Notes under the pieces: model-generated
Database searches by the model: none
The model's input: the letters and a program-made list of their open reading frames with translations, nothing else
Told to the model about the DNA's origin: nothing
Made by a program: the position numbers and the translations under genes
Shown here: piece by piece, positions 67-64,000 of the stretch
How the letters are laid out: every line of letters starts with the position of its first letter
How positions within the stretch are numbered: the first letter of the stretch is position 1
Source of the DNA: Trichoplax adhaerens
Lineage: Eukaryota; Animalia; Placozoa
NCBI RefSeq assembly: GCF_000150275.1
Contig: NW_002060958.1
Coordinates: 100,966-164,965, forward strand
DNA: 64,000 bases
Reading direction: 5' to 3'

Positions 67-3000
67 GTGAAAAGAATGTTGAATTCAACTGGCGGCATGA
101 TTGGAATTCGCTTTTAAGCCACGATGAATCTTTAGTGATGGGGCGTTATTCTGATGAGTACTTCCCACATGCAGATGATCTGGTGAGCTCAGTAGCAGAT
201 ATTGCATAAATTCTATATACTTTCTGTCTCATTAAAGCTTACATTCACGTCTAAGTTGGAAGAAATGACAATAGATCTAAAAAATTTTAGGTTACCTACT
301 TCAATGATTATGCAGACAAGCTAAAATTACGAATCAAGTACAACACTGAAGTAAGCAATATTTCGGAAATCAAGGAAGCTAATAGCACCCAAAATGTATT
401 CGAAATGAATGATTCCGAAGGCAATTTATACCGTTGTAACGTGACTATTGTTAGGTAAATAAGAACACTTTCATCAATTACAATTTATTGTAGAGTATGA
501 TCATTTCCCAGATTTTTACCTATCAGAGTAATACAGTATTTCTGTATGCAAATTTACATTATAGTACGGGAATTTCTTTGGCAAATATTCCAAAAGGCGC
601 TATTGGAATCGATAATGCAGTTGTAAGTGATTAATCTTAATGCGGCCTTCTCTTGCAATGCTTCATTTTATCTAGTCTTAAAATTAGATCTAGAAGATTT
701 ACAAACATTATTTTCCACCAACAAACTCTTAGATGTTCAAATGATCTGTTTTTAAGCATTATAGAATTATTAAAGTAGTTAAATATAATTTAAAATCTAT
801 AGGGCTATGAATCCATGTCCATGAATTTAACCACTTATGAGGGTAAAGATGTTCTTATCCTCGGCCAAGGTAAATGAAGCAATGCAATATGATGCATAAT
901 GTTACGGTTTAGAGGACTTCTAACCATGAAACTTTCGAATTTCTGATCATTCCTGAAGAAACGAACTATATCTCATTTACTATTTATTGCATCTCCAATT
1001 TTTTAATCTTCACCTTCTTAAAACAAATCTGAAACTCCTATTTCAGGGAATTCTGCATTAGAAATTGCGAAATTTATCTCTCCGGTTGCGAATAAGATTC
1101 ATTTGGTCGGCAGGTTGGTGAAGTTGAGATTATTAGTTGGAAAGCTGTATTATGCAACTTGTTTAAAGTTGAAAGAGATACAAGTATTACCTCACAGCAT
1201 TAGCTAATGATTTTGAATGTAAATCAAGTAAAAACACTTAAACTTTTGTTTAATTATACATCAGAAATGGACTCCGTCAATCATGGTCAACACATTATGT
1301 TGGAGATGTTAGGTAGAATTATGAAGATGATATGATAATTTTAAATCAAACTAGTAGAATATATGTAACTAGTACTTATTAATCTATAGCTATCGCATCT
1401 CTATAAAGGCTAATTACATAGTTTCTGAGAAAATAGTATACTACTTATTATTCGTTTATGGTAATTGTTATTAAACGATAAAAAACTAACATATTGAAGT
1501 TTAGATGTCCCATTAATTGTATAAGTTTGATGAAAGAAATCAATAGATGAAACTTGAGCTGGATTTTTCAAAATTTCTTAACGAAAATTATTTTGAAATC
1601 TTGTGTGAATAGAGGAATTAACAGAGATTTTCTGGATGGCATGCAACTTCGATTTATGGATAGTATAGCCTGTAAGTGAACTTGATACTATCGAATAGTA
1701 TAAATATTTATAAAGGGTAAGTTATTGATCATAGATTTTCGAAAAATTTTATACCTTCTATTTACTATTCGGCTCAGATATCGAAGCTCAAAATATTGTT
1801 TTTAAGAAAACTTTGAAGAATAAAATTGGTCTAAAATTACGGGATCCTTTTTCAAAGAGAGTCATAGGCAAAGGTATGTTATTAATTATGACTATTATGA
1901 CGAAATAGTACTTTAATTCGCACTTAATTGTCGCTCATTCTAATAAGTAGTTTTTTGATACGACAATGGTAGAATAAGTTTGAGCTTAAAAGTTGCGGCT
2001 CTGGTAAAATGCTATAATGTGAAAACTAATGAAATTTGCTATTAATAGGCAGTAGAACATCAGTTTGTTCAAGGAACATATTAACTATCACAAATTCTTT
2101 ATAAGTTATTAATAGCCTTCCGCGTTTGTTTTTAGGCCAAAATAATAATATTCTACGAAATGAATACGATCATATAATTCGATGCCTCGGATTCCAGGTA
2201 TAAAAGATAATTATAAGCGCTTCGTAATTACACATGCTTATTAGCTAATGAATAAGTGATATAAAAGATATTCCTTCCTTATTCAAATAGTTGAGGCGTT
2301 GCGAAATATCGTATATACTTGCCACAAAATGCTACATAATCAATTTTTTCATTTATGCGACAATCATTTTAGTTTGACGATTCTATATTCAATGGATCGA
2401 CCAAGCCATTCAGGCTGAAAGATGACTTATCTAAATATCCATTTCTACGTGATAGCTATGAGTCTGTAAATGTTCCTAATATGTATTTCGGTAAAAATTC
2501 AATTAATATTTTCGTTAAAATTTCAATAATTACTGCTAACAATTTTAAGTCAGACAAGGTAACTACAGTTCACTTCCATCAATTTTTTAAATCTTAGCGG
2601 GCAGCTTAGCTCATTCACGCGATTATCGTAAATCTTCTGGAGGATTTATTCATGGATTTAGATACTCCAGTAAGTAATAAATTAACTTTATCTTACTGTT
2701 AAGGCTTTATGTAATAATTTGCTTAATGAGGGCCTAGCATTAATCTATTACCATTACAAAATTTCATACTAGTTCGCGCATTACATCAAATGTTGGAATG
2801 GAAGTATCATGGTAACCCATGGCCATCTTCTCGCCTTAGCACAGATGCTTTGCTTTATAAGATTCTAAAAAGAATAAATGAAGCCTCTGTAAGAACTAAA
2901 AATTGTATCTTAAACTTGCAATCAACTTTAATTGAATGCATTGACTACTTTCAGGGAATATATCAAATGTTTGGCGCGTTTGCTGACATTATTGTTATAG

Positions 3001-4267
3001 GTAGAGTCTATATGATACATCTATTTTATGCTTTTCATCAAATGGAAAGCCGATAAAATTTTTACTAAAATCGCAGAAATATAAAGACCATGAACTGACT
3101 AACAATTCATGTCATATAGATGAAAATGGATCCCATTATTATCTCGAAGATGTTCCGATTCATATCATACCTAAACTAGAAGGTAAAATATATATTTTAA
3201 CTCCGAGATAGCCCAGTTCTCGCGCTTTGATATCAACGTAATAGCAGCAGACCAAGCGATTGCATGATGCTATTTTATTTAGTAATTTATCATTCTTTGA
3301 TCAATTACTTATCACGATTTCTTATATCTAGCTGCACATGTAAATGTATCTGAGAATAAATTTAGCTAATGTCTAATCACTTCTTTGAAATTTCATTTAT
3401 TTATAAAGAGCGAACTGGGGTTCCGATTCAGAAAAAAATGTTTGTACTTACTTTTGAATATGGAAAAAAGTTTACTGGAGAACGGTAAAGTAGTAAACAA
3501 ATCCAATATATCGTCATAACAGCTTCGAATGAAAGTAGTTATAAATTGAATGATATGTTAGATGTCCATTTCAAATTCTAATATATTGTTTGTCTATACC
3601 GACAGTACTGACACGCTGTCTCCAGGTCGTATCCATATTAATTGGACAGAAGCTCATAAATGTAATTTTATTCATCCCAAAATTTATTATTATGAAGAGC
3701 CAGTAACTGGTAAGATATCATTATCATCACTCTAATTAGCATATAGCCAATTTTATGCGTATGATACTTTTATATGCGTATTAAAAACTACGATTGCTTA
3801 ATTTTTATCTTATTGGGATTGCTGGACTGTCTACTATGTTAGCCTTAGAAACTTCCGGGGCATTGCCACCACCTACCAAACTTCATCATGTTGTTGAAGA
3901 TTTTTTAACTCACTGGTTTGATTTGATTTTATAGGCTTTAATTTCTTATTTGAAATCATGTATGTCATAATAACGTAACACAATCGCACCTCATCAACTA
4001 TAGGGATAAAATAGGGAGCCATATCATACCTATAAAACGGTTCTTGGCTAATATGCTTAAAGAAGATTTCAACAACTATTATGCTGATTCATGCTTTGAG
4101 GTATTAACAGTAAAAATGCCATCTTTTCGCCTAAAGATGTATTTTTTTTCTTTTTCTCATGAAATATTATGCTTTTTAAGATGATGATGCTACACAAAAG
4201 TGCTCCACCTGGCTGCTACCGAGGACAATTTATGAGCAGACACCCCGTTTTTTATCTGGGTTTTTAA
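67..4267 (+). CDS. FOXRED2: FOXRED2/ERFAD-like FAD-dependent oxidoreductase, array copy 1 (5'-partial; coding exons 4-22 visible)
   Basis: Manually spliced GT-AG exons. Exon 67-182 reads [38 protein letters not shown]. Later motifs: GYESMS..LILGQGNSALE (NAD(P)H Rossmann), [73 protein letters not shown], all matching FOXRED2 motifs as I recall them. Last exon 4181-4267 ends ...RHPVFYLGF-TAA. Confidence 0.93.
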
Positions 4268-6252: not shown

Positions 6253-9200
6253 ATGAGACAATTACTATTGCAAAGAATTAAACTCATTGGGTTTGTCCTT
6301 TACTGTTCAGTCATTATTGCAATTATCGAAGCAAAGACAGAAAATCACGACTATTGCGTAGTAGGTAGTGGTCCTGGAGGTAAGTTAAATTGGAGAAATC
6401 GATATTGAGTCACCATTTAACGGATTATTAGAATTGAATAGTTATCCTTTATCATTTATCCCTTAAACAACAAATGCTTTCTGTCTGAAAGCTACTTAAA
6501 ACTACTGCTTCTGTAGTTTATGAGAAATGAACCAAAACAATTTATTTCATTTATGTATTTATACTTAGTAATTTGCAAAATTTTGCAAATCGTTCTGTAA
6601 CATAATGAAGGAGATGCCAATTTTATATGCTATATGATACCTTTATACCTGGACTACTGCTTTATTATACGCCAGAATATCTTACTTGCTCAATATTCAA
6701 TTAGGATTACAAATAGCGTACTATTTGGAAAGTGCCGGAAGAGATTATGTCGTGTTTGAAAAGAATGATATATCAGGTAGACGGTAGCTATTAATTTGTT
6801 AACTTAAATTAGTTAAATTCGTATGAAATTATATCTATTCGATAATATTTGTTGCTGCTAATGCATACCTTTAAAGGAGGTTAAATAATTGCAATACTGG
6901 AATCATGTATAACGTAGAAGTTATAAGCAATTCATCAAATTACATTAAATAAAAGTTGTTACGGCGAGAATTACGTACGTTTTCGCATATTATGATTACT
7001 AGTCTAGCCCTTTCTCGTGATGCTTCACGAGCTGTCAAGCTACATTTGTACTTTTTACTTTACTGTACTTTATTATCATTAGTACCTTTACATAACAAAC
7101 CCAAAAATCTGTTCACCAGCTCTATGTACTAATAGTATAGAGTTCCATAGTCCAAATTCTACGCAGCCATGAAATCAATTTTCGATTTATAATAGTTACT
7201 AGTTTTAATTTCGAATTCCCTATGCGAAACTATAAGAGACTAAGATTTTCCGTACATAATGCTTACGCCGATTACAAGACAATTGATAGATACTGATTCA
7301 ATGATAAACTCATCAAAAAAAGATTTGATGTTGAACGTTGTTTTATTAAAGCTGCGTTTACAAGAGCGGCATACAATTCTTACTCAGATGACGAGTTGCA
7401 GTTAGGCTCCATTCGAGAAGAAATCAGATTAATTTATGGCGACAAGTATCTACATTTCATTTAATCTTAGTACTGTATAACTACATAAACTTCTTTATCT
7501 ATTCCATTAGCTTATCCAGTTTTATAAAATCTTATAACGGCATGTGAATTAGAAAATATAATCATTATTCCGTATGTCTATCAATCAAAATTTTAAAGTG
7601 TTATCTCTGACGATAATTCTCATCTTGAAAAAGACTCATTTTATTTCTATTTAAAAATTGCAGGGTCATTCTTTACCGTTTACCCGAGGCATCGCAAACT
7701 AATTTCTGTAAATAAATTACATACAGGTAATAAAATCTCGAAAATTTTTGGCGCACCTCCTTTTATCTATGAGCAGCACTATATTGAACTAGTTAAGCAT
7801 TAAAGCACCATTCAAATCCTCAATAAATAAAGAATACACATCTAATATATGCTATCTCTAAATATATATTAATTGACATAATACCATGTTAAGCTGCAGT
7901 GCTGCATATGGCAATAAGACTACATGTTCATAATGTATAAGCGTACACGTATATTTGGATGTATGTCCAACAAGTGATACATACTATCAGTACACAAGTA
8001 TACACTGATTGCATTTCAGTAGATTTTAATAACGTTATTTACTACGCCTAGTCCAAAGCTTTTTGAAAATCGAAAGAATTTTCTTTACCTTATAGTGCTT
8101 ACGAATCTTTGTTGAATTCTATAGGCCATTCAAACAGTGAATTTAATCTGAGACATGATTGGAATTCCTTACTAAGCAAGAATCAATCATTTTTGATGTC
8201 TCAGTATTCGCGAGAATATTATCCAAATGCTGATAAATTGGTAAATTAATTCAAAGTTATGATTGCTAATCATTAATTTGCTATTGTAATCCCCACTACA
8301 AAGTACTTCCTTTACTAATTTTTTATGTATGCAGAAAATGACTGAACCAGTATGATTATACTTATAATCAGCCACGATACCTTCGAGCCTTAGATATTTC
8401 ATTCTTCTAGTGCAGAAAGAGAATTATATTTATAGCAATAGTCATTCCTTCTGATCACTCATATATTATTGAGCTATTATAACGATACTAAGATAAAAGT
8501 GATATCTTTATATAGCAGTATCATCATCAAGGATTACTGTTGCATTTCTTCATGTAATTTATTGAAGATATAACATAGTTGGTACGGTCTACCATTTAAA
8601 TCATTGTATGATATATTGAAAATTACTAAATCATAGCTTATGTGGTGTGATAATGTAAGTTCAGCTCGGTTTAGGATAGTGTTAGAGTTATAAGCAGTAT
8701 TATTTCTCAGTATAGAAAACATGAGAGATACATACATAGTAATTATACTGCTACGTATAAGTATGCTATTCAGGGTTATTCAGTTTAACAAACCATAGCT
8801 CTGTATCTGCTATACATTACTTTCTATAAAGCAAATTAATGATGCTTGGTAATATATTAAAATATTAGCAAAAGCACTAATCAGTTTGATCTGTTTCGAT
8901 GGATTATTGAGTTAATTCATTTTCTCTATGTTTTATTAGGTGGAATATCTCAATGACTATGCAGAACAATTTAAGTTAAAAATTAGATATGACACCGATA
9001 TTTTAACCATTACTCGAGATAGTGAAGATAGTAATGCCAAGTTTAAAATGATGGACAGCAACGACAATACCTATATTTGTAAAGTAGCCATTATAAGGTT
9101 AGAATTGCCTTTCGAAGTAGTAACTGCTAGATTATATCCTAGATAAAATTCTTAACTTCCAGCATATGTAAATCACCTAATCTTTCTCTCCTGATTTCCT

Positions 9201-12200
9201 ATATCGTAGTACCGGAATTTCTGTACCATATGTCCCAGCCGGATTCGTTGGTAACGATATCATTGAGGTTGGCGATAGCCGAATTACAGTCAATTTTTGG
9301 GTTACAAATACTGTAGTTACGATAAAGTTGACTTGATTCAGATCAATACGTGTGCTATAGCTAAATTGCAGAATAAGTTCTAGATAATATTCAAACCTAA
9401 TTCTAGAGGATTATAATTCATTTCTAATTATTAACTCGGTAGTTTAGGTGCGAGAAATATTTTTAAGTACTTTTCCACATTTTTGGTTAATGTTACTTAT
9501 TTAGGGATATGAAACAGTGTCCACCAATCCCTCTAATTTTAAAGGTCAAAATGTCTTGGTTCTTGGACAAGGTGCGATGGAATAGATGAATAGACGGATA
9601 TCTTACATCTTCACTTTTCTCCACTTTTTGTGTGGCAAGATTAAAATATTTTCAGCTGAGGTTTTAAGGTTTATTTGAAGCTAATTGTCGATATTTTTGA
9701 TGTATTTCAAGGCAATTCCGGATTTGAAACAGCGCAAGCTATATCACATACTGCAAATTATATTCATGTGTTTGGCAGGTAACGGTTCTATGAAAATTTT
9801 CAATACCGCGTTTAGTAGGTGCAATTAAGTTAGTACAAGACTCTGATTAAGCCAATACCTCCAATCTGCATGAAAGCGATGCTTGTGCTATTTCGTACAA
9901 TAAATAGTGCAACACTTGTTTACTTCATTAATAGAACTCGCGTTCGCCTTGCCACTTCAACACATTATATCGGGGATGTTAGGTAAGGGTTGTGGTACTT
10001 AGTAATTTCGTAAGAGTGTACGTGCAAATTATTAGAGTTAGATTTCATTTTAAATACTGGCTGAAAATTAGTGGAAGCCTATCATAAAATTAGCCGCAAC
10101 TTATAGAATGAAATTATTGATTCACTGTTTGCTCAGAGCCATCAACAGCAGACATATTGATTCCTACCAATTAAAAACCTTGGACGGAATTTTAGGTAAG
10201 TAACATAAATAATATTTATGTACTGATTGATCTCGATATAGTAAATATATTCCTTAGTTAGGTATAATTTCGATTTAATGACAGCTATGGAAGTCTATTT
10301 AATATCACAACCCTAGAATTAATATAATTCTAGTAGGCTTTAACTGCAATAGATTATACGATATAAGAGATGATTATCTTTTGATTTAGAGGGAGATTTA
10401 AAACTTGTTGCTGTAACTAAAACACGCGAAAATCGCTATCAGATTGGCATTAGAACTTCAGGCAATTACTATCGTAAGTAAATTACTACCGCTTTCACAT
10501 AACTTCTATAGCGGCAATACTACTTATTCTATTATTTATCTCTATGGAATTAGGAGAATACTCTGATCTCTAACTACTATGTTACGAATGATAGTATCAA
10601 AATTTAATCAGATTATGACTATTACTACCGTATTAACCTAATTCTTTTGGATTTGCAATAGGTGGTGCTAAAAATGCACGCAAAGACTACGACCGGGTTA
10701 TTCGCTGTTTAGGATTCAAGGTAGTTATTTACTAAAGCTAGCATTCACTTTATGTCCTTGATATTGATACTTAGATGGATTTTGGAAGATTCAGTCCTTG
10801 ATATGATAATGAATTATGTCCGTTATACTGTTGTCACTTTTTCTTCAGTATGATGATTCTATCTTTGGCGAAAATGCTAAACCTATTAGAGGAAGGCTTA
10901 CATACGAAAGATATCCGATGATGAAAGGCAACTTTGAGTCTTCTAATGTAGATAATATGTATTTCGGTAAGCTAGTTATCTGTAAATACCGGATAAAGTA
11001 TTTCTTGTCTATCTACTTTTTTGTCTTAATTGGAATTAATAAGCAATAATTTATCAAGCAATAAACTTTTAACTATATCAGTATAATGAATACGGTACTT
11101 AATTGATAAAAGTTCTACTGATAGAACTGGTGATTAACGTATTCAGAGAATGTCTTTACACTATAGTATAATACTGTCAATTTATTCTTAGCTGGTTCTA
11201 TGGCACATTATTTGGATTATCGCCGCTCAGGCGGTGGCTCCATTCAAGGCATTCGCTATAATGGTTGGTATTGATTCGATATGAAAAATTCACTTTTGAA
11301 TCACTTCTTTCCATGTTAGAACTACTTCTAAATGGAATTGCTTAACAGCTCTTAGCATGATGCAAATGATCTATACTAAGCATGAACTAGCTAGATAGCC
11401 TCAAAAAATTTTAAACGATCTACTACTATTTAGCTCGTGCCTTGCATCGAATACTTGAATGGCGATATCACAAAATACCTTGGCCTGCAGTGACATTTAG
11501 AGTTAATGCATTGATAGATCATGTTATTACTCGTATTAATCAAGCTTCAGTAAGTCTTTATTGAATGAAATAACAGAAAATAAAATTGCATAAGTATAGC
11601 TTATCACGCTCATACGTAACATAATACATTTAATTTAGGGCTTATATCAAATGTTTGACTCTTTGATAGATGTTATTCTAATCCGTAAGTAAATAAATTG
11701 TTCTGATTGTATCTACTACTGTTAAGGAAATAATTGACATCAGCTGATGACTTTATTTGATCAAATTACTGATATCTTCTAATACTGCTCCTATTCTAAT
11801 TTTAGAAAAACGAAATCGATTTCAATACTTAGAAGAAGTTCCAGTAGGTCTTTTACCCAACCTTGAAGGTGATGAACATTTTAATTTTGAGACGATGTAT
11901 AGCATGATGTAGTTATTGCGATAAATTTTTTAAATTATTCTAATCCTCATTTAACAGTATTCAATATTTTATTATGCTTTCAGAGTTAACAGGAAGAAAG
12001 ATAATACGTGGATTTATAACCTTGCATTACAAATACGGCAAAAATTTTTCTAATCCCGAGTATGAACTAGATTTGCTACATTAAATATCAATGACTAAAT
12101 AAGATAAATTGGATGAGAAGCCTCATTAAATTTCAATTTATTTTCTTTATTTATGAATATTTGTAATAATGATTTAATAAATTTTCAATATAAAAAGAGT

Positions 12201-13742
12201 AAAATGCTTATAGGATGAAATTAATTTTTAAAATACTTACTTTACATGGCAATTTAAAGTATTGAAACAGAGAAAACTTCTAACTAGACTTGTAACGCAA
12301 ATTAATTGGAATTTTTAATAGGAAAATATTATTACAAATTACTTATTATACTTACAGTTCTGGCCAAAGTATTATTGGTTAATTAATAGATGATACGAAT
12401 ATTTAACGATTCGTTAAAAATTCAGAACTATTAAGTCTATATTTCATTATTTGTAGCACCGATACATTGGGCGAGAGATTATTAACCTATTTTGCTAAAG
12501 ACGGCTACAAATGTAAATATCATCACCCAGTCATCGGATACTATAAAAAGCCATTTACAGGTAATATTCACCGAATATGCTTAATAGTTTCAAATATTTA
12601 AGCTATGTAGAAGAACGAGGATTTCGAATTGGTTCGATTTGTAAAAGTAGTATTCTAATTGCTGATTGCCAATGACTGATGCTAATGGCTACCATTATGA
12701 CCTCCAAACTCAGGGTTACCGCATAGTCTAACAAATAGCTAATGTTCTCTTAAGTTATAATAACTCCTTACTTTTGCGATAGCTTAGGTAACGTCTACAT
12801 AATTCTAGTAAAGCATATTTAATAAAATTAGCTGGTATGCATGCTAGATAATACCAATATTCCGGTAAATTAAGCTTAATTTTATGAGCGTACGAAAATA
12901 TCAATAATATGATTTGCTGCAGCTATAGTAATGAATTAACAAAATGTATCTTTATTTTCGTGTTAATACCTTGATGCTAATTAGTGACAACGAAATTGCA
13001 TCATTAAAAGTACCGTAAATAGTAACTTGCGATAGCGTTACTATATAATGAAATCTTTCTACTGTAAATCAGGATTCGAAGTAGAAGTATATTATTCAAC
13101 CATGATAGTAAAGCTCGCTAACATAATCAAAATCGTTTTCTAGAATAATAGCTAGATGTTTATTTATTAATTTAAATAACTTAAAAAGACTCTATACGAT
13201 CTATTTTATCGGCAGCCGCTTTTTAAATAGATATGTTATTATGATATAAAAATAGCAGTTTGGGTAAAGAATCGATATTGAAATGACTATATTACATGCA
13301 GAGCTATCAAAGGATGGAACTTTACCGCAGCCAGATAAGTTATTCCATGTCCTCGAAGATTTTCTAACTGAATGGTACCATAGTAATTGCTATAGCTTTT
13401 TATTAATCTTAATTTCATTTCCCACCTTAAATTATCTATATTCTATTTCTTGTATAAGGTATTTAATGGACGAACACGTATTTCCCTTGAAAAAGTTTTT
13501 GGAAAATATCATCAATAAGGATTTGAACAACTATTTTTCCGACTCATGTTACGAAGTAAGCATAGCACAAGCCCTGCATCGAAATGAATTTTGTTTCTAA
13601 AAGTTTTCAAATTGCTTCGATGATATAGATGGCAATGAAGTATAAAAATCTACCAATTGGATGCTCCAGAAACATTATACAGCGAAAAAAAGAATCTAAG
13701 AAAGAAGAATCGAAGGAAGAAAGACCAGAAGATGAAATATAG
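6253..13742 (+). CDS. FOXRED2: FOXRED2/ERFAD-like oxidoreductase, copy 2 (complete, 22 coding exons; acidic C-terminus ending EDEI)
   Basis: ATG 6253 in an ACCATG context. Exon 1 (6253-6379) reads MRQLLLQRIKLIGFVLYCSVIIAIIEAKTENHDYCVVGSGPG(G): signal peptide plus FAD GxGxxG. Exons 2 (6705-6776), 3 (7664-7726, GSFFTVYPRHRKLISVNK) and 4 (8125-8240, [13 protein letters not shown]) follow. The exons splice in frame. Last exon 13629-13742 ends QRKKESKKEESKEERPEDEI-TAG. Confidence 0.94.
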
Positions 13743-14109
13743 GAAGTTTCAGAACCCCCAAAAGTCCCAGTAAATAAACTTCCTAAGCGATATTGTATTT
13801 AATCATCCACCCTTCATTGTGGTTCATCCGTAATAAAACATTTTACAAATTTACCTATTGGTTAGCTTAACTTTATAAACGATGATGTGACGTATATCCT
13901 ACAATGCAATATATATTACTATTAATAATGAATGTTGTAGATCATATCGTATCTATGTTTTTTTATCATATTAACGGATTTGTACCCATTTGAGTAGTAG
14001 TAATCAATAGCAATAAACATAACCACTGCAAGAATTTGATTATAGCATTTATAGCACCTGAAAGCTTACTAAATTAGAATGATTTGTTACACAATTGTAT
14101 AAGTTAATG

Positions 14110-50700: not shown

Positions 50701-53700
50701 GCATTTTTTATTTCAAGATAGCTATCAGCTAGTATAAGCAAAGAATTTCTAACCTACACATATAATCTCAAACTAATTTGCAATTGTACTATTCTTATAG
50801 AAATAGACTTCGAATAGCTACATCGACGCATTATATAGGAGATATTAGGTATCGTTAGTCCGCTTTTTGCGACGGTTTTATATTTACAAATAGCCTAATC
50901 ATATGCTTTTAGTAGATATCTCTATATATTGGTTTCGTATATTGCTATTTATAAAATCAAAATTAATTTTCCTTTAAAATATGAATTATACAGGATTAAG
51001 AGCGGTTAATTCTCGAGTTATCGATTCATACCAACTTAAAACCTTAGATGGACTTGTAGGTAAAAAAATTTCAAATATAAAATGATATCTTAACAATTTA
51101 TTCAATCCTGGCTTGAAATATTATGTAATATTTAGTGTGTTAAATCAGACAGGTTACAAGATATTTTAAATTAACCAATAATTTATATTACCTACAGTCG
51201 ACACATTACGCAAAGATGTAGCATAGCTGCAGAAATCATAACCAATCCATGGTGTATAATTAAGATAGAAAATATTTAATTTTGGCAGTGTTAAATTAAG
51301 AGTAATGTACTCCATTCATTTAACGAATTTAATAGATAACATAAAATATTCAGATCAGTAATTCTATCACGTATCAGTAAAGTTTTGACTAGCTTTCTTA
51401 TGAGCCTTTGTAAATGCCGTTGCAGAGGGCGATATAAGAAAATTTGGATTTATCAAAACTGAAGACGGAAAAATTAGAATAGGTCGATTAATGCGCGAAG
51501 GTCACAAAATTATAAGTAAGCTCCACGAAACAATAGTCTTTTATGATATATGAGTAAGTATAGCTTGCAAATACATCTAGCAGTGACTGATTAAATTTGG
51601 CTTGTAGATTTATCAACTCATTATATAATAATTTAGAATATGATTACAATTGAAAAAGCTGAAATAAATTTACCATATCAAATTTATAGTTGATACAGGA
51701 GGTATACGTACAAAATATCACCATGTCATTCGCTGCTTAGGTTTTCTGGTAAGTTAATAAGTTTCTAGTAAATGATACTAAGAAATAAACTGATGCACTG
51801 ACTAAAAATGTTTAAGTTGACACACAAAATTGTACTTGTAATTTTCTCTTACAGTTTGACAATTCGATATTTAAGAAAGGAGCCAGGCCAAAAATGAGGA
51901 AAAGTAATTTGAGCCGTTATCCTAAAATTAGCTCAAGTTACGAATCCGTAACGGTTCCTCATATGTTTTTCGGTAATAAGATTGTTCTAAGTGAATAGCT
52001 TTGATGAAACTTTACGCCTAAAAGACAAAATTTTATCCCTTAATTCAGGGATTATAATCTCTACATTATATAGACTTTACGTCATTCCTACAGTAAATCA
52101 ATTGAGAAATTTGTGCAGTTAATTACAATGAAACTGCACTCTGTAAATTATCTTGCGCTTTTAGAAAAATATGAAATGAGGTTACAAACGAACTCATTAC
52201 ATAACTTATTTAAATACAATGGGAGAGAACTTGACTGATAGGTGTCTTATCTGTAATATTCCTTGAAAGATGATTGAAATCGCCGTTTTATGCAATGACT
52301 AAATATTGAAGCTACTAAAATTTGATTTTGGTACTATTCAAATGTTGACCTGATTTCAGCTGGGTCTTTAGTTCACTCTCTGGATTATCGACACTCTGGT
52401 GGATGTTGTATTCAAGGTTTTCGATATGCAGGTAAAATGATTAAATAGATTTGCTAGCATATACATCCACTTAAGAACATGTTTATTCAAACTATTAGTT
52501 TTTCCACTTTGCAATATTGTTGTATGACGATTTCTAATTTTGCATGATATATTCGAAGGAATGTCGTAGAGAAACAACTGTATCTGAGACGCTAAGCTCA
52601 TATCTAGCTAAATGATAACCTATGTTGCAATATTTACTGTAACTTTTTAACACAGACAAGTGCTTAAAACAATCTTAAGATTCCATTTAATATACAATTT
52701 TACACAAACAGTGTCAATCTTACAATATTACTTTAGCAATTTCTTTAACTAACGATACATATAAGAGCTATTTCTGATATTGTAATTACTTTATCTACAT
52801 GGTGAAATTTATGTTGCTAGTGAATTCATTTATAACACAGTAATCTACTACTTTATCCCATGGGAAGGCTTACGATGCAAGTAAAAAACATTTGCAGTGT
52901 AATTTTCACTTTTAATAAAAATTAACAAAATAATTTTTTAGCTCGAGCTTTGCATTACCTATTGGAATGGCGATATCACCGAAATCCTTGGCCTTCAATA
53001 TCTATCAAGACTACACATCTACTTAATCATGTGATGACTCGTATTAATCAAGCCTCAGTAAGTACATAACTTTTAATTGCAAAATTATTTCGGCATTACA
53101 AATTTTTATACCAAGAAAAAGTGAATAATTTAAAGCATTCTATATCTACCAATTCATAGTGATAAATTAAATAAAAGTTTATTTTGGGGGCTGCAGAGAT
53201 CTCTGAGTAATGTATTTATATCATGATAATTATAGGGGCTTTACCAAATGTTTGCTATTTTGACTGATGTCATTTTAATAGGTAAAATAAATAACTATGA
53301 CAAATAATAAATCGGTTAGCCTAATTAAAGTACAGTCTATATTTTAACTTGGATACATCCTAGAAATAATTTCGCTATAGTAGCTACAAATATTGTACAT
53401 TAGATACGTTAGTAATATAAAAATTTAATCTTTATTTTAGAGTGAATTCTGATATACGCTTAGGATGGCGTTATTTTACTAATCTCTATTCATAAAATAT
53501 GATAGGAGATGATCATCAGCATCAGTACTTGAAAGAAATTCCAATCTTAGTTTTGCCTGAGCTCTCAAGCAAGTTTATTTCATTTTATTTCCATTCTTAG
53601 CATAATTTTTTCAACGTATTATAGTCAAGGGATTTAGTAACTAATGCGTCGATTTTCTATAATCAAAAAAATAGATTTCTCTACAATCTATATAAGTAAA

Positions 53701-55064
53701 TATTAATTTGATCATGATTTATGTAATTTATTAATTTATTAATCTTAATGTAGGTGTTCGGTTTTTATGAGTATTTCCAACTACTTAGAGAACATTCATT
53801 TATTTTTTTCTGCTAAATATCTTTAACACTTAGCTCCCTTAATTTCAGAATTAACGGGTCATATGATCACGCATGGTTTCATTACCTTAACTTTTGAGTA
53901 TGGAAAAAACTTTTCAGAGCCTGGGTAAGTATATTTGAATCATGATTTCTCTAATATAAAATGTAAAATGTCGGACATTATCGTAGTTTTTAAATCAGAT
54001 ATAAGGTTTATAGAGTAAAATTCACGTTCTAATAGCTTGATACGATAATTAATTAGTATTTTCGGTCCCCTTAGCACGGACACATTGGGTACAGACAATT
54101 TTAGCCACACGGCCAAATCGGCTCATCGAAGCAAAAATATCCACCCGATTCTCCGCTATTACAGCCGACCTTTTCAAAGTAGAGAAATTATACTTCTGAA
54201 TTGTATATTAGAATAGCAGTTATTCATATCATTATGATATCCTAATTTTGATCGCTAAAATGTATTCCATTACTTATTACTCATGAAAACACTTCTATTA
54301 GAAACGGAAAGGAACGGAAGACTTCCTACTCCAGATAAAGTGCATCATGTTGTTGAGGACTTTTTATCAGATTGGTATGGAAAAAGTTTTATCCTAATAA
54401 TATTCTTATATTTATTCTAGCTATGTAACGATTTTACCAATCCAGGCTATCTTGTAAAATACCTTATTCGGATTTAAACAGGACCAGCTACAATCACCAC
54501 ACTTATCAGCTGCAACTCTTTCTTCAAACTCTGCTCAAAGTAGATTTAAACGAGTTTTACGCCGATTCTTGTTTCAAGGTAGATACTTATCTAAAGATGA
54601 AATTGATTTTAACCAAACAAATAATACTGAGCTTACCTATATTTAGCTTTATACTTGAGGCGTTAAATTACTTTCAATAATTTGGTATTTAATTTAATTT
54701 AATCCAAATTCTTGTTTTAAACTTACGTTTGGACAAGAATTATATTTTATAGACTGGCTACTGTAATTGATGTGATACTATATCAAATACTGTAGTTAAT
54801 TATGTTATTATTTTGTACAGCGATAATAGCGCTGTAGTATTACCAGCCAGGCTTTCGTGCCCCAGAACCCACATCTTAATAAATTATACGTTTCCGTATA
54901 TAATACTCTTCGCGATTATCTTGTACATTCTTTTGGTACAACATAGACACGAGTATTCTTTAACCTTTAAACTAAATTACTTAATTCACTACATAAAATT
55001 ATAGACTTCCATGATTTCAAAGTCTATGCCTCTAAGCTGCTCCAAACCTATTCTGCAAAGATAG
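47766..55064 (+). CDS. FOXRED2: FOXRED2/ERFAD-like oxidoreductase, copy 6 (complete; GGCCIQG type; two GC-AG introns)
   Basis: ATG 47766; exon 1 reads [35 protein letters not shown]. Motifs: [63 protein letters not shown]. The reading frame requires GC donors at 50465 and 53569. Last exon 55005-55064 ends [14 protein letters not shown]. Confidence 0.92.
50465..50624 (+). other. GC-AG intron (intron 7 of copy 6)
   Basis: Exon ends CTT GGC CAA G|gcatgt where all paralogs have G|gt. Acceptor gtag|GA AAT TCT restores LGQGNS. The nearby GT at 50469 is in the wrong phase. Confidence 0.75.
53569..53848 (+). other. GC-AG intron (intron 17 of copy 6)
   Basis: CCT GAG CTC TCA A|gcaagt at the position where paralogs use A|gt or G|gt. 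Acceptor ttcag|AA TTA ACG GGT gives PELSKLTG. The downstream GT is phase 2 and incompatible. Confidence 0.75.
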
Positions 55065-57174: not shown

Positions 57175-60100
57175 ATGGCAAACATCTTTAGCTTTACCTT
57201 CTTATTATTGGCTTTGCCCTTCATTATTCAATCGAAGTTTATCAAACATCAATATTGTATCGTTGGTGCTGGACCAGGAGGTAATTTTTTATCGTTTTTA
57301 TGTTTAATGATTTAGATTTTAATAGCATCTATGTTGCAATTTAGTTATTGTAAGACATGAAATACGGCAAATTATTTATCATAATAATAAGGTTAGATTT
57401 ATTAAGCCACCTCAATATTATGAAACGATTAGGATTACAAATGGCCTATTTTTTACAGCGAGCTGGAAGAGATTACATCGTTTTTGAAAGGCATAATATT
57501 GCAGGTAATCCATAATATTGTGTAGAAGAAACAATCTTTCCACCGAACAATCAGGTTGTAACACTTTCGGCACCAAATTATGGGCTCGAGTCAATATTTG
57601 ATAGTATAGCGTTAATTATCCATATTTTATTCTTGTTACTAAGCATATCGAAGGTTATAGACGATTGATTACTTTTAGCATGCTCACTTTAAGAGCTTTG
57701 AACGTCAAGATAATTTTATTCTCAAAGCAATCTTAATCTTATCAACTTTGGATAAGTTACATGTTTCAATTAAACTGTGATCAGTGTTGGATATCAGTAT
57801 TTATAATCCGAAGAATTTTATTGTGAGGATATCTGCTGCTTTCAAACTCCACATTACTTGGTTCCTCTTGAATAGAATCATTAACCGCTATTTTCTAACA
57901 CAGATTTCGTAATTTCTCCTATGGATATACTTTTTCTTTTTACAACTGTTGTACGAGAACGAATGAGCAATTTGTGGTAGTAGGAAATATTTTAATTTAA
58001 TCTTTTTCGATCCTTCTAATAACGATTTAATGTTAACTACAAATGAGATCCGAATGAAATCATTCTTCTATATATCTTCGTATTTTTATTAACAGTGTTT
58101 AATAAATGTCAAGGTCTCTGTAGGACTTCATAATCTTCCATCTTGACCAAATTCAATTTATCAAGAGTTAAATTTACAACTTATCGCTTCATTCAAAATT
58201 ATTTATAGAAATTTGACCTTAACTTTCTACAGTAACTGTTTCGCCTGTGTAGAGATAACTACTTGAATAGGAATAGCTATTTTCTACTTTAAATCTCTTT
58301 TTTGATTGCTGTTTAAGTTAATCTATAGTTTTATTAAACCTTCTAGGCTCATTTTTCACCCACTATCCGCGACATCGTCGTTTACTATCCTTAAATAAGC
58401 AGTACACAGGTGAAAAAGCTTATTATTAATAATTTGGTAATATGGCGCGATAATATAGCTATAATGAAAGCATCAGATTACTTAGATGTTTCTTGGCGAT
58501 TAGTATCAAGTGCTGACAAATTGGAAATTAATTGATTTGGCTTGTAATTGTTGATTAGGTTCCTTAAATTCCGAGTTCAATCTAAGACATGACTGGAATA
58601 CTCTTCTAAGCGATAATGATTCTTTAAAAATGACTCGTTATTCCGACGATCTTTATCCTCATGCTGATCAATTGGTAATTTTTGATCGTTAAACAAGTTT
58701 GGATGCCGACATGTTGAAATTTTAGTATTCTGTAGTCCTTGCAATTTAGAAATGTGATATTGATAATAATGTGATGCTAATCTATTGTAAAATTCACCTT
58801 CATTATACAGATTAGAATTTTTTTAACAAGCTAGCCATCAGATCATTAATATCCTCTACATGTCGATCTTAAGTTAATCGTAGTAATTATTCCTAGTAAT
58901 AGTAAGCTTCCAAATTCATAATCAACAGTAAATTAGGAAATGAGCAGTAATAGTTTACCCAAGTGTTATTATCATATCGTATTTTAATCCTCCATTCAGC
59001 TCATTGATCCACTTAAAATCAGTAACGTAAATCAACCATAATATCGCTGCTTAGCCGGAAAGTAATCCTTGTATCATCTTTAAAATTGTACCATTAATAT
59101 GAAATTTGTAAACATTTGCAAATTAACATTAATGGACTAATAGAACTTATAAAATCTGCCTCCTCATTTACACTACATATACACTTATGCTAAACATTTT
59201 TAGTATTCATCAAGTAAAAACATGAGGAAGAATTTGTTCCATCTATCATGATTACATTAATCATCCTCCATACAGAAATGCAGTAAACGGTTTAAAACGT
59301 TTAGTACGCAATTCTTGTAACAAATTTTAACTTCTAAAATAGTAAATTAATATTATTTCATTACATGGACTTTGATTTTCAAATTTCGTATCCAATGGCT
59401 TGAAGTAATCTAAATTCCTAATTACTTTGATCTGATCTCCAGGTTCGTTATCTAAATGATTACGCCAATCGACTACAACTAAATATCCAATATCAAACAG
59501 ATATTGTTAAATTATCCCGAGGATATCTTAATGGTATCAATATGTTTAAGTTAATTGACCAACATCAAAATATCCATTTGTGTAATGTAACCATCATTAG
59601 GTATGCTTAATTGGCTGGAATATCCAAATTCCAAGTCTTGTTACTACACCTGTAGTTTATACTGCACAAGTAGCACTAACATTATTACTATAATTAAATC
59701 TATGCAATTATCCAGCACCGGACTCTCAAAACCTAAAATACCAGATACAACCGGTATGCAATATGCTGAGGTAAGTGAATAGTAACGAGCAAAGGTGGTA
59801 GCAAAACAATATAACTACGCAATTGTTACCATTCTCCTTTGCAATTAACTTAGGGACCTATCGTAGTTGAACTAACTCTCAACTATACAAATAAGCTACT
59901 AATGAGTGATAGGGTTTAAATACTTCACTTTATTTACGTTAATCTTAGTCGTAAAATGTATTAAAGAAAAACGTAAGAATATTCTTAGCAATAATAGTCA
60001 AGTGATCTTGCAAGTGACTAAAAGGAACAGAGCAGCTAAGTTAGTGCTCGGCATTTTATAGTCTCGGCCTACGCCGACGATGCACTTGCGAATATTCTTG

Positions 60101-63100
60101 ACATAGCGACTAACACTGTACAGTATACATATTCTAGTCTATTGCATTGGAGAATAGAATAGTTTTAGTTCAAAATCCAATTTACAATTACGAAGAAAAC
60201 ATAGATACAAATACAATATCTCAAAATTAGTGCAGTATCTTCACTTCATTGTCGCATTATTACGTGAACGATATTTCCCCTTTCGTCGAACTTTCCTATT
60301 AAAATTACATTCGATATTAGCTGCTTTAACTAATTACAATACCTTGGTTATACCTCAATAATTTTAGCAATTTTAATCCTATACACCACCTTAAAATTTA
60401 GCTATATGTTAACAACATTTAAATAATATGAAATTCTTATAATAGAATAATAATGATGCTCTCGGCATTTACAACGTAACGCAAAATCTTTGTATTAATA
60501 TCCGTCTGTATTAAACTAATTGATACTATGATACGTTGAATTTACGATCAATCTATAGCTAAACTTTTAATTTTCCTGCACATATTTATAGGGCTACGAA
60601 TCCATATCAACCAATACTTCTGAATATGTAAATAAAAATGTTTTAATTCTAGGACAAGGTAACCCTAATTCTATACTATTCATATACTTTTGACCTAACG
60701 AAGTTGAAATCGTATTATTTCACGTTTCTTCACGAAATTTCTATCGTACTTGTAAGGTAATTCTGCGTTCGAAACAGCTCAAGCTATATCCAACGTTGCC
60801 GGTCTTGTCCATCTTTATGGCAGGTTTGCATTTATGTGTTGACTCGAGCTAATTAGGTTTACATATTTCAATTTAAGCGCTAGGAGTGTTAGCACCTATG
60901 AATTTTACCTACCTGCTCAATTCTGTATATTGTAAGTGGGTTATCTCTAATTAATTTCATATGTAGGGGTGGTGTTCGATTAGCTACATCAACACACTAT
61001 ATAGGAGATCTTAGGTCAGTTAGATCAACAAATTGCTATAGTTGAAGAATGAAACTAAGCACCAAAAATTTCTGTCAACTATGAATAATAATTTTTCATA
61101 AGCTATTATAAGGATAGAACTGAATTATCAAAAGTATTTTGTAAAGCAAGGCCTCTTTATACAAAAATAAATTTTTAATATGTGCCGTTTATTTCGATAC
61201 ACTCACATATAGAGCCGTCAATTCCAAGATAGTTGATTCTTACCAACTTAAATCTTTAGATGGTATCGTAGGTAATTCACGAAGGATTTAGATATTAGAA
61301 TTTATATTAATACATTAGATATAGTATTTTCAATTTTTTATAAATATGATAAACTGTATCTTTCTCTGAATATCTATAGAAGGACCCTTAGAAAACTTTG
61401 GAATACTTAAACGTAAGAAAGGATTAATTTCCATTGCTCTTAGGGGTACAAAAGATGAACTTTTTCTCGTAAGTTCATTGCATTTATGGCAAAACTAGTA
61501 ATTCAGAACTTGATCTAAATACCAATAATAGAGTAGTAAAATTTATGATCGGCAATTACTTACTTTTATTCAAGACCATGATTATTGATAACTATAACTT
61601 ATAGTTATGTTTATTTCTACTATCAATTTCTATGCGCAGATGATATGACAGGAACACGAAAAGGATATCATCATGTGATTCGATGCTTAGGCTTTGAAGT
61701 TAGTATTTATATTTATGTAAATGAACACCTTAAAATGATGGGTGTTAATCATACATATATAGGGGTATGTGTATCAGCTAATTTTCATCCACTGTTAGTA
61801 GTAATGTTATCCATTTAAAAATATATCAGTAAAGAATGTCGTAGCAACGCTTAGAAATTAAATTATACTTTAGATAAGTTAATTTTCTTACCATCAAGTT
61901 ATGTACAGCCTCACCCAGAAATAATAGAATCAAATTATTTTTTCAAGAAACAAATAAAATGATGATCAAAATTAAAGCCATAAAGTTTACCATCTTTTTT
62001 AAGCTTGATTTCTCATAGTTGGATTAAATGATTAGCGAAATAGTTTATATTTTCGTTTAGTAATAACGTAATGTTAGTTTCTACTAATCGCTATTCATTA
62101 TCCTTGATAGAGGGAAATTATTGGCCTTGTGGTGAATGCAATAATTCATAAACTTACCCGATTTTATTTAAATCTATTAAAATTTAGTACGATAGATCTA
62201 TATTTGGCCAAGGTTGTAGACCAAGATCTGCGAAGAAAGAGTCTATAGAACACTATCCCGACATTAAAGCCAATTATGAAGCGGTTTCTGTAGCTCATAT
62301 GTACTTTGGTATGGATATATTTTCACCTATATAATTACACAGTAAAGTTTTTTAATCTGATAAACTCTTGTGTCTCGTGTTTTAAATTTGCTATCAAGTC
62401 AACTTCATCCGTAAATATATTTATTAGTTTAATCAATCATAATTAACCAAAATATTAGCAATCATTAACATCCAAATATTTACTTCCCTGAACAATTGCT
62501 ATTTTAGCCGGAGCATTAACTCATTCCTTAGATTATCGACATTCTGGCGGATGTTGCATTCAAGGTTTCCGATATTCAGGTACTAAAAAACTATATTTCA
62601 TCTCTCAGCTAAATGATATAATTGATCTCAAGGCATGACAGTATCCCAGCATGCTAAGTCATTGCAAAAATTGCAGTAGCCCAGAGTTACTCTACATGCC
62701 CATGCTTTATTTAATAAAGGCAGTACATTGATACATATTTAAATTTAAACTTTTACACTTATTTACATAGTTGTTAGTGCATGGCAATCATACTTCTAAT
62801 ATAAAATGACTTATCGTTATTTTAATTTTCAAATTGTTAGTTCGTGCATTACATCGCTTATTAGAATGGCGATATCATCAAGTTCCTTGGCCTGCTAAAT
62901 TATTATCAAGCGAACAATTATTATATTATCTTAGCATGCGAATAAATCAAGCTTCTGTAAGAAAGATTGTGTTTGCTTATTTCTGCCAAAGAATAATAAT
63001 TATCGTTTACTAATTCTAAAACACTTATGAAAGTTCAATATATAAAGTTTATATAAAAACAATAATAACTTTACAAATAATATTTGAAACGTTTAAGTAT

Positions 63101-63975
63101 GTAGGATTATTTTCAATATCTTGTATGATTTAATTTAGGGAACTTATCAAATGTTTGGAATGCTAGCTGATGTTGTATTGATTGGTATAGTTTTTCATGA
63201 CAATTTTTTGCAATTTTAATAGCAAATAGAATGATTATTTTGTATAGTACTATAAATCTTGTAATCGAGACTGTTAATGTATTAAAATTAATACAGGTGA
63301 TAACCATCAACATTTGTATCTTGAAGAGGTTCCTACACGAGTTATCCCTAATCTTGAAAGTAAGGATATCTGTTATTCCAGTAAAAATATTTTAATATTA
63401 ATGGTGGTAGTACCGATAGCTGAAATGCCTTTTTTCCACCCATATACTTTAAAAGTAAATTGTTATCTCCGAGTCATTCAATGCTATAATTTATTTATAA
63501 GAAACTTCATTATGTTGCCATTGTGTGGTAGCTTACCCTATTTACCGAGCTATACCGCAAGCAGCCTATATTGCTTACTTTATTATCATGTATTTAAATA
63601 GATTTAGCTGGACGAAAAGTTACTTATGGGTTTCTAGCCTTAACATTTGAATATGGCAAGAATTTCTCACAACCAAAGTAAGTTGAGTATCTACAGAAAC
63701 AACAAATGCTAGATGAAATATTTGAATCATAAATTAATTGATTAGTAATGTAGTGTATTAAATTTAGAACCCATAAGTAGTCTTCGCCAATCCTTGTACA
63801 CAGTCCTTTTCTATTTATCTAATAATAATATTATGTAATAATGATTTATTGATATGCAATATTTTTCACAGTAAAGATACTTTAGATCGGGAAAATTACA
63901 GTTTCACGGCAAGAAATGCTTATCGTAGTCGCAATATCCATCCTATACTACGTTATTACAAACATCACATTCGAG
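57175..63975 (+). CDS. FOXRED2: FOXRED2/ERFAD-like oxidoreductase, copy 7 (3'-partial; exons 1-19 visible; GGCCIQG type)
   Basis: ATG 57175; exon 1 reads [35 protein letters not shown]. Motifs: [73 protein letters not shown]. Exon 19 ends at 63975 and exons 20-22 lie beyond the window. The exon 11 donor is ambiguous (see findings). Confidence 0.9.
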
Positions 63976-64000
63976 GTAAATCAAAAGTATTTTTCATTTT

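What the first reader, a model, noticed from the sequence alone, without database searches (positions are those of the whole stretch)
67..63975. Tandem array of at least 7 diverged FOXRED2/ERFAD flavoenzyme genes: a lineage-specific oxidoreductase cluster
Seen: seven same-strand paralogs fill the window and run off both edges. They share the 22-exon structure with conserved intron phases, have unalignable introns and strongly diverged but essentially open reading frames, so the duplications are old and retained by selection. Known: vertebrate FOXRED2 (ERFAD) is a single ER-lumenal flavoprotein linked to ER-associated degradation (SEL1L/OS-9/ERdj5), and its catalytic substrate is unclear. Inference: a housekeeping ERAD role does not explain seven or more diverged copies. 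The array looks like a neofunctionalised enzyme family acting in small-molecule oxidation or reduction (detoxification, chemical defence, external digestion or secreted redox chemistry).
Basis: partly seen in the sequence, partly recalled or inferred. Interest (0 to 1): 0.85.

Follow-up and report, generated by a model that had tools for sequence, protein, structure and literature searches.

The report
Eight-gene FOXRED2 flavoenzyme array in Trichoplax
The window is filled by a head-to-tail row of old, intact and transcribed copies of FOXRED2, a normally one- or two-copy flavoenzyme of uncertain function, which the simple animal Trichoplax has expanded to eight genes that are its only copies of the family.

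Summary
The window is Trichoplax adhaerens scaffold DNA. It holds five complete and two edge-cut same-strand genes. With the flanks, the array has eight intact 22-exon genes (595-618 aa) plus a two-exon relic.

All intron positions and phases are identical. Only exons align between units. Proteins are 44-61% identical to each other and 41-45% identical to canonical FOXRED2.

The N gap lies in the E-F spacer and interrupts no coding sequence.

No other FOXRED2 homologue was found in the genome. The eight copies form one clade, so the expansion is lineage-specific.

Selection is supported. dS is saturated and dN/dS is about 0.08-0.20. Intact A-type and B-type orthologues occur in metagenome contigs. 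Gene F shows two synonymous and no nonsynonymous differences across strains, against 23 intronic ones.

RNA contigs from three studies reproduce 15 introns of gene F, including two GC-AG introns. Genes B and D have weaker transcript evidence.

A shift to new small-molecule or secreted chemistry is not shown. The lack of KDEL is uninformative. Copies D-H share 14 fixed replacements at otherwise invariant sites, including a new Cys-Cys pair.

The scan has not reported this family before. Interest is moderate.

The parts
67..4267 (+). Gene A, exons 4-22 (exons 1-3 lie upstream of the window at -1022..-349, locus L002). 615 aa, intact. Intron 3 has a GC donor (gcaagt).
   Evidence: Spliced alignment. 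GC donor. An A-type orthologue occurs in metagenome contig L007.
6253..13742 (+). Gene B, 22 exons, 618 aa, intact. Ends in an acidic/lysine-rich tail ...EERPEDEI.
   Evidence: Loose ends of RNA contigs in run X9 carry B exon 13 and 14 sequence. A B-type orthologue occurs in L005/L006.
15035..23013 (+). Gene C, 22 exons, 614 aa, intact. Sister of A.
25039..34711 (+). Gene D, 22 exons, 602 aa, intact. Exons 11 and 12 were set by hand at 30075-30161 and 30497-30549.
   Evidence: Residues 387-602 are 100% identical to XP_002116516 'expressed hypothetical protein' (P0002).
31459..32088 (.). 630-bp interspersed repeat inserted in intron 13 of gene D.
   Evidence: At least 40 full-length copies at 96-97% identity in the genome.
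37011..45768 (+). Gene E, 22 exons, 605 aa, intact.
43797..44426 (.). Second copy of the 630-bp repeat, in intron 17 of gene E.
46863..47231 (.). Assembly gap (N) inside the E-F intergenic spacer (45769-47765).
   Evidence: The stop of E and the ATG of F flank it. Spacer length is within the range of the other spacers.
47766..55064 (+). Gene F, 22 exons, 595 aa, intact, transcribed and spliced as modelled.
   Evidence: 15 introns are reproduced by RNA contigs of 4 runs from 3 studies, and loose ends confirm the exon 3-4 and exon 19-20 joints.
50465..50624 (+). Intron 7 of gene F, GC-AG (gcatgt...ag).
   Evidence: Sequence. The joint 50462>50623 can slide by up to 3 bases; shifted +2 it gives 50464|50625. 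Seen in runs X9, X5 and X7.
53569..53848 (+). Intron 17 of gene F, GC-AG (gcaagt...ag).
   Evidence: Sequence. Joint 53568>53849, 'GC..AG', in all four runs.
57175..64000 (+). Gene G, exons 1-19 in the window (exon 19 ends at 63975). Exons 20-22 lie at 64100-64755 (locus L003). 595 aa, intact.

Best explanation
The locus is a placozoan-specific tandem family of eight functional FOXRED2 (ERFAD) paralogues. They are the only members of the family found in the Trichoplax genome.

Each gene encodes a protein with three parts. The first is an N-terminal hydrophobic leader, which looks like a signal peptide. The second is a two-Rossmann FAD/NAD(P)H module (GxGxxG, then GQGNSAFE) of the type II FMO / low-molecular-weight thioredoxin-reductase fold. 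The third is the roughly 230-residue C-terminal region specific to FOXRED2.

The inferred chemistry is NAD(P)H to FAD to an acceptor, inside the secretory pathway.

The copies arose by old unequal-crossover duplications, in the order ((A,C),(B,(D,E,F,G,H))). All have since been kept under purifying selection.

A and C keep the most ancestral residues, so they most likely carry the ancestral ER-lumenal role. B, and especially D-H, have fixed new residues at positions that are invariant in other animals. This is best read as a change of substrate or partner specificity.

Shown: the anatomy, family membership, monophyly, constraint, and transcription and splicing of gene F. Inferred: the leader function, the cofactor chemistry, which copy is ancestral-like, and any change of specificity.
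For: - Structure and intactness: eight 22-exon ORFs without stops and with identical intron positions.
- Family: the exon 13+14 profile hits proteins named FOXRED2, which carry Pyr_redox_3. Copies are 41-45% identical to Nematostella, urchin, brittle-star and dog FOXRED2 over about 600 aa.
- Conserved sites: copies keep 130-139 of the 166 columns that are near-invariant in 25 eumetazoan FOXRED2 sequences.
- Only copies found: both own-genome searches hit only C1399:101-177 kb.
- Monophyly: SH-aLRT 99 and FastTree 1.000.
- Constraint among paralogues: dN 0.31-0.53 with saturated dS; omega is 0.08-0.20 where it can be computed.
- Constraint in orthologues: A versus L007, 321 codons, 62.9% identity, omega 0.12, ORF and exon lengths kept. 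B versus L005, 80 codons, omega 0.16.
- Constraint in gene F: 2 synonymous and 0 nonsynonymous differences in 1487 exonic nt, against 23 substitutions and 5 indels in about 1.9 kb of intron.
- Transcription: 15 introns of F are reproduced in RNA contigs, including both GC-AG introns. Fragments of B transcripts also appear. Gene D matches an 'expressed' RefSeq model.
- Divergence: 14 positions are fixed-derived in D-H, for example AGGFIHGFRY to [11 protein letters not shown] and C keep the canonical state at many of them, including the G, F and H of that motif.
- Fold: an AF2 model of Nematostella FOXRED2 matches type II FMO 4a9w (TMt 0.80) and YpdA 7a7b (TMt 0.74).
Against: - No enzyme activity, cofactor content, localisation or cell type was tested.
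- Transcription is shown well for one copy only (F).
- dS is saturated, so the omega values are rough. They also cannot separate past from present constraint, except for F, A and B.
- The derived residues in D-H could reflect relaxed constraint on a stem branch followed by renewed constraint, with no new function.
- The bootstrapped 'careful' IQ-TREE runs did not finish. The trees therefore rest on a quick ML search and on FastTree.
- The signal peptide was judged by eye; no predictor was available.
Confidence: 0.7

Rival explanations
1. Same chemistry, partitioned expression. All eight copies keep the ancestral FOXRED2 activity and differ only in where, when or how strongly they are expressed (dosage or regulatory subfunctionalisation), with no new substrate.
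For: 78-84% of the invariant FOXRED2 columns are kept in every copy. All cofactor motifs are kept. Other secreted-enzyme gene families of this genome also stand in tandem arrays (unchecked notes).
Against: Paralogue distances are as large as the distance to vertebrate FOXRED2. There are 14 clade-fixed replacements at positions invariant from cnidarians to mammals, including a new Cys-Cys next to the motif that follows the FAD-binding FFAG(T/S) strand. Such changes are unusual if nothing about the protein's function has changed.
Confidence: 0.22
2. The array is a neofunctionalised family of secreted or granule-stored enzymes that oxidise or reduce environmental small molecules (detoxification, defence, external digestion) and no longer serves ER quality control.
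For: Human FOXRED2 reduces nitroaromatic prodrugs, while no protein-disulfide reductase activity has been demonstrated for it (PMC5751730, PMC4767869). All copies have leaders and none has a KDEL-type end. In Najle et al. 2023, Table S3 reports the ventral/pan-epithelial multi-species module as enriched for Pyr_redox_3, FAD binding, ER lumen and ERAD GO terms.
Against: Non-vertebrate FOXRED2 generally lacks KDEL, so its absence says nothing about secretion. No canonical copy was found elsewhere to do the ER job. The gene-level sheet of the atlas is cut in the stored copy, so the link between this array and the epithelial module is not demonstrated. No secretion or substrate data exist.
Confidence: 0.15
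3. Several copies are decaying or silent (transcribed pseudogenes or dead duplicates), and the array only looks functional.
For: Gene F has lost two canonical GT donors and gene A one. A two-exon relic shows that copies can die. Direct RNA evidence exists for only three copies.
Against: All eight ORFs are open across 22 exons despite saturated synonymous divergence. The two GC donors of F are used in RNA, and two of the three GC donors (A intron 3, F intron 17) match the GCAAGT consensus. Gene F shows no nonsynonymous differences among strains.
Confidence: 0.05

Closest known systems
Vertebrate FOXRED2 / ERFAD (ER flavoprotein associated with degradation; Riemer et al. 2009, as reviewed in PMC5751730)
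   Same: Collinear over about 600 residues at 41-45% identity. Shares the leader, the FAD GxGxxG motif, the second dinucleotide motif, RHDWNSL, THY(V/I)GD, IRCLGF, the GG.I.GFRY region, RIN(E/Q)ASG.YQMF and HH.VEDFLT.W.
   Different: Eight tandem paralogues instead of one gene. No KEEL/RNEL ER-retrieval end. The tail after the last conserved Cys is short. The B and D-H clades have replaced residues that are invariant in canonical proteins. Interaction with SEL1L, OS-9, ERdj5 or ERp90 is untested.
Invertebrate and cnidarian FOXRED2 (e.g. Nematostella P0198, Strongylocentrotus P0166)
   Same: Same architecture. These also lack a KDEL-type end. Occasional lineage-specific two-copy duplications occur in Amphiura, Antedon, Branchiostoma, Babylonia and Pinctada.
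   Different: These proteins are 50-66% identical to each other across phyla. The Trichoplax copies are only 41-45% identical to any of them and sit on long branches. Copy number is eight, not one or two.
Bacterial type II flavin monooxygenases (SMFMO, PDB 4a9w) and YpdA bacillithiol disulfide reductase (PDB 7a7b)
   Same: Nearest solved folds to the N-terminal ~400 residues of a FOXRED2 model (TMt 0.74-0.80), with weak sequence similarity (E 4e-6). They share the two-dinucleotide-binding-domain NAD(P)H/FAD chemistry.
   Different: 13-19% identity. They have no signal peptide and no counterpart of the ~230-residue C-terminal region. The comparison used the Nematostella protein, not a Trichoplax copy.

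Membership tests
FOXRED2 / ERFAD family | N-terminal FAD-binding beta-alpha-beta with GxGxxG directly after a leader | tested here: met
   All eight copies have YC(I/V)(I/V/L)G(S/A)G(P/L)GG spanning the exon 1-2 junction and align to the same motif of canonical proteins. Exon-wise Pfam gives only weak NAD_binding_8 and Pyr_redox_3 hints. The joined protein was not scanned.
FOXRED2 / ERFAD family | Second dinucleotide (NADPH) motif GxGNSxFE and the rest of the Pyr_redox_3-type module | tested here: met
   G(Q/T)GNS(A/G)(F/L)E is present in all copies. Relatives retrieved with the window's exon profile carry Pyr_redox_3 at E 1e-24 to 1e-38.
FOXRED2 / ERFAD family | FOXRED2-specific C-terminal region (RINEASG.YQMF ... 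HH.VEDFLT.W ... SC) | tested here: met
   A profile of exons 13+14 finds 299 proteins at E<=0.001. The full-length ones looked up that carry a source name are almost all called FOXRED2 or FOXRED2-like.
FOXRED2 / ERFAD family | Full-length collinear similarity to named FOXRED2 proteins and placement inside the metazoan FOXRED2 tree | tested here: met
   Spliced alignment to Amphiura FOXRED2-like protein P0007 spans at least its residues 51-628 in every copy. Identity is 41-45% over 580-612 aa. The copies form one clade among metazoan sequences.
FOXRED2 / ERFAD family | Cleavable signal peptide and ER-lumenal location | not testable with these tools
   Hydrophobic N-termini of 20-30 residues ending in small-residue sites (AKA, AQA, IQS ...) can be seen. 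No predictor or localisation data were available.
FOXRED2 / ERFAD family | C-terminal KDEL-type retrieval signal (KEEL in mammals) | tested here: not met
   The eight ends are LGF, DEI, KSI, LKT, TKK, LQR, IAQ and MKL. This feature is confined to the vertebrate sequences compared (dog KEEL, Anolis RNEL) and is absent from Nematostella, urchin and oyster. It does not define the family.
FOXRED2 / ERFAD family | Association with the ERAD machinery (SEL1L, OS-9, ERdj5, ERp90) | not testable with these tools
   Known for the human protein only (PMC5751730).

The most novel reading that the evidence does not exclude
In this reading the D-H clade (perhaps with B) is a new kind of FOXRED2-derived enzyme. 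It replaced the invariant G-F-I-H of the GGFIHGFRY motif, which lies just after the FAD-binding FFAG strand, with C-C-I-Q. That would create a vicinal cysteine pair able to shuttle electrons from the flavin. The enzymes would work in, or be released from, the feeding-side epithelium on disulfides or small molecules of the biofilm prey. A and C would keep the ancestral ER role. If so, Trichoplax would be a natural dissection of the unknown FOXRED2 reaction.
Probability: 0.12. Interest if true: 0.8.

Novelty: new variant of a known kind. Interest (0 to 1): 0.5.

Why it matters
FOXRED2/ERFAD is conserved from cnidarians to humans at 50-60% identity, yet its physiological substrate is unknown. The only demonstrated activity is the reduction of nitroaromatic prodrugs (PMC5751730).

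Trichoplax has no single canonical copy. It has eight selected paralogues, of which two are ancestral-like and five share new residues at otherwise invariant positions. This gives a natural set of variants for asking which residues set the enzyme's specificity and what the ancestral reaction is.

In the protein collections searched, the array is represented only by one 251-residue fragment of gene D. Orthology-based surveys that rely on such collections will therefore have missed it. No paper in the searchable library mentions FOXRED2 together with Trichoplax.

Otherwise this is an ordinary mode of gene-family growth. The same genome holds other tandem arrays of enzyme genes.

Tried and rejected
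- Exon-by-exon Pfam scans gave only sub-threshold hints. Family identity was therefore established through an exon-profile search and its named hits.
- Absence of KDEL as a sign of secretion was rejected after alignment with non-vertebrate FOXRED2.
- GT-only spliced alignment suggested frameshifts in F and an odd exon 3 in A. These turned out to be GC-AG introns at the conserved positions, and the two in F are confirmed by RNA.
- The aligner's exon 11/12 solution for gene D read through intron. It was replaced by hand using the conserved acceptor and donor.
- Nothing family-related lies in the 19 kb upstream of gene A. Downstream of H there is only a two-exon relic.
- YN00 failed, and NG86 dS is undefined for many pairs because of saturation.
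- Bootstrapped IQ-TREE runs were killed or timed out. A quick IQ-TREE search and FastTree were used instead.
- A search with the only annotated fragment (P0002) found nothing useful. Paralogue transcripts could therefore not be traced through protein databases.
- Literature searches for a described expansion were blank.
- The gene-level sheet of the placozoan cell atlas is cut in the stored copy.
- No tRNA or Rfam match lies in the window.
- An assembly artefact is rejected because the copies differ by 39-56% in protein sequence.
- They were not sent to Pfam, HMMER, atlas, structure or look-up tools.
Full report
**Source and setting**

The window is AT-rich (about 30% GC). It lies at G000:C1399:100966-164965 in a 105.6-Mb assembly of 1414 contigs. 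A protein retrieved with a profile from the window, XP_002116516 / EDV20872 'expressed hypothetical protein [Trichoplax adhaerens]', sits on a contig of exactly the same length, 1,633,787 bp. It is 100% identical to part of my model of gene D. The window is therefore Trichoplax adhaerens (Placozoa).

**Checking the observation**

- Stop-to-stop pieces of the + strand fall into 19 recurring families. Each is present six or seven times, always in the same order. More sensitive comparison added two weakly conserved exons. Spliced alignment added the last exon.
- Splice sites sit at the same offset from conserved motifs in all copies.
- I wrote a protein-to-genome spliced aligner and fetched 20 kb on either side. 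This gave eight complete 22-exon reading frames of 595-618 codons without internal stops.
- Coordinates are A -1022..4267, B 6253..13742, C 15035..23013, D 25039..34711, E 37011..45768, F 47766..55064, G 57175..64755 and H 66652..74532.
- Spacers between genes are 1.3-2.3 kb.
- Downstream of H lies a relic holding only exons 3 and 4. Nothing related lies within 19 kb upstream of A.
- At the DNA level only exons align between units, at 60-79% identity. Introns do not align, apart from a young 630-bp repeat in one intron each of D and E.
- The array is real and is not a chance pattern.

**The gap**

The N run at 46863-47231 lies between the stop of E (45766-45768) and the ATG of F (47766). The spacer that holds it is 1997 nt, within the range of the other six. 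No frame crosses it. RNA contigs that reach upstream from exon 4 of F carry exon 3 sequence and extend about 255 nt. That fits exons 1-3 plus a short leader. A whole extra gene could hide in the gap only if its stated size were wrong by more than 7 kb. That was not tested.

**What the genes are**

Exon-wise Pfam scans were only suggestive. I aligned exons 13 and 14 of all copies by reference (A1) and checked that the profile covered both exons. I then searched 1.84 billion representative proteins with it.

- The search gave 299 hits at E<=0.001.
- Nearly all of the full-length hits looked up that carry a source name are called FOXRED2 or FOXRED2-like. Their sources include Amphiura, Scleropages, Babylonia, Convolutriloba, Ciona and Pan. 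They carry Pyr_redox_3.
- The eight Trichoplax proteins are 41-45% identical over 580-612 residues to Nematostella, sea-urchin, brittle-star and dog FOXRED2.
- They keep 130-139 of the 166 columns that are near-invariant in 25 eumetazoan sequences. Both dinucleotide motifs and the family-specific C-terminal motifs are kept.
- An AlphaFold model of the Nematostella protein (pLDDT 81) matches type II flavin monooxygenase 4a9w and bacillithiol disulfide reductase YpdA over its first ~400 residues. The last ~230 residues have no Pfam family.
- By sequence, no close solved structure exists.

**Lineage specificity**

Own-genome searches with the exon profile and with Nematostella FOXRED2 hit only C1399:101-177 kb. 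No canonical copy was found elsewhere.

In a quick ML tree with 38 other sequences, the eight copies form one clade (SH-aLRT 99). The topology is ((A,C),(B,(D,E,(H,(F,G))))). FastTree on a reduced set agrees on the deep splits (1.000, 1.000, 0.996, 0.998). Bootstrapped runs did not finish.

Canonical proteins are 50-66% identical across phyla. The Trichoplax copies are no closer to one another (44-61%) than canonical proteins of different phyla are. The duplications are therefore old, or evolution was fast, or both.

Two-copy lineage-specific duplications also occur in Amphiura, Antedon, Branchiostoma and Babylonia. Pinctada has two genes on one contig.

**Selection**

- Among paralogues, dN is 0.31-0.53 and dS is saturated. 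Where computable, omega is 0.08-0.20.
- Two short representative hits led to ENA metagenome contigs of 29-30% GC.
  - L007 carries exons 11-22 of an A-type gene. Exon lengths are the same and the frame is open. It is 62.9% identical to A against 53% to C, with omega 0.12.
  - L005 and L006 carry exons 12-14 of a B-type gene, 78.8% identical to B, with omega 0.16.
  - The A/C and B lineages were therefore already separate in another, presumably placozoan, lineage and have stayed intact there.
- For gene F, contigs from four runs of three studies differ from the window at 25 substitution sites. 23 are intronic. The two exonic ones are synonymous, CGA>CGG and CTA>CTG.

**Transcription**

RNA-seq contigs reproduce 15 introns of gene F at exactly the modelled junctions (two RNA-Seq runs and two further runs guessed to be RNA). 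These include both GC-AG introns, 50465-50624 and 53569-53848. Loose ends confirm the exon 3-4 and 19-20 joints.

Loose ends in one run carry exon 13 and 14 sequence of gene B. Gene D's 3' half equals a RefSeq model labelled 'expressed'.

**Functional divergence**

There are 14 positions where D-H share a fixed residue different from the near-invariant canonical one. Examples are W>T, Y>R and F>N, and the motif AGGFIHGFRY becomes [11 protein letters not shown] shares several of them. A and C keep the canonical state at many of them, including the G, F and H of that motif, and retain the most invariant columns overall (139 of 166). This fits a shift of specificity in B and D-H, with A/C ancestral-like. 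It is not a test of function.

The absence of a KDEL-type end is uninformative. Only the vertebrate sequences compared have one.

**Literature**

Reviews describe ERFAD as an ER flavoprotein with an NADPH motif. It is linked to ERAD partners. No protein-disulfide reductase activity has been demonstrated for it, but it can reduce nitroaromatic prodrugs (PMC5751730, PMC4767869).

No paper in the searchable library mentions FOXRED2 together with Trichoplax.

One lead comes from the placozoan cell atlas (PMC10580291, Table S3). Its ventral/pan-epithelial multi-species module gc001a is enriched for these terms:

| Term | Genes | p-value |
|---|---|---|
| Pyr_redox_3 | 13 | 1.2e-14 |
| FAD binding | 18 | 5e-8 |
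| ER lumen | 19 | 2.9e-10 |
| ERAD pathway | 17 | 1.4e-9 |

Three of these — FAD binding, ER lumen and the ERAD pathway — fit what is known of human FOXRED2 (ERFAD is an ER-lumenal flavoprotein linked to ERAD), and Pyr_redox_3 is its Pfam domain. The gene-level sheet is cut in the stored copy, so identity with this array is not shown.

**Verdict**

Family membership, age, lineage specificity and purifying selection are supported. New small-molecule or secreted chemistry remains a hypothesis. This is a large, old, previously undescribed expansion of an enigmatic but known enzyme family, of moderate interest.

Noticed in passing
window 31459-32088 and 43797-44426: A 630-bp interspersed repeat is inserted in intron 13 of gene D and intron 17 of gene E. 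The two copies are 95-98% alike. The genome search gave 664 first-look candidates, and all 40 scored were full-length at 96-97%. It is a young, high-copy element, probably non-autonomous.
   Followed up: partly
L004 (window coordinates 75628-75691 and 75812-75940, beyond the window): A relic of a ninth copy holding only exons 3 and 4 lies 1.1 kb downstream of gene H. Both exons are still open.
   Followed up: partly
window 50465-50466 and 53569-53570; L002 (window coordinate -348): Three GC-AG introns sit at otherwise conserved GT positions: two in gene F and one in gene A. The two in F are used in RNA contigs.
   Followed up: yes
L005, L006, L007 (ENA metagenome assemblies ERZ23499241, ERZ27264487, ERZ23499115): Environmental metagenome contigs of 29-30% GC carry intact A-type and B-type orthologues with the same exon lengths. 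An uncultured relative of Trichoplax appears to be present in those samples.
   Followed up: partly
window 14169-14424: A 128-nt unit is directly duplicated (73% identity) in the B-C spacer.
   Followed up: no
window 46790-46862: A few degenerate CCCTAA-type (telomere-like) units lie immediately left of the assembly gap.
   Followed up: no
PMC10580291, Table S3 (not sequence): The ventral/pan-epithelial gene module gc001a of four placozoan species is enriched for Pyr_redox_3, FAD binding, ER lumen and ERAD GO terms. This would fit FOXRED2 paralogues, but gene identifiers were not readable in the stored copy.
   Followed up: partly
protein collections: In the protein collections searched, the array is represented only by a 251-residue fragment of gene D (XP_002116516). 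No model of the other seven genes was found.
   Followed up: partly
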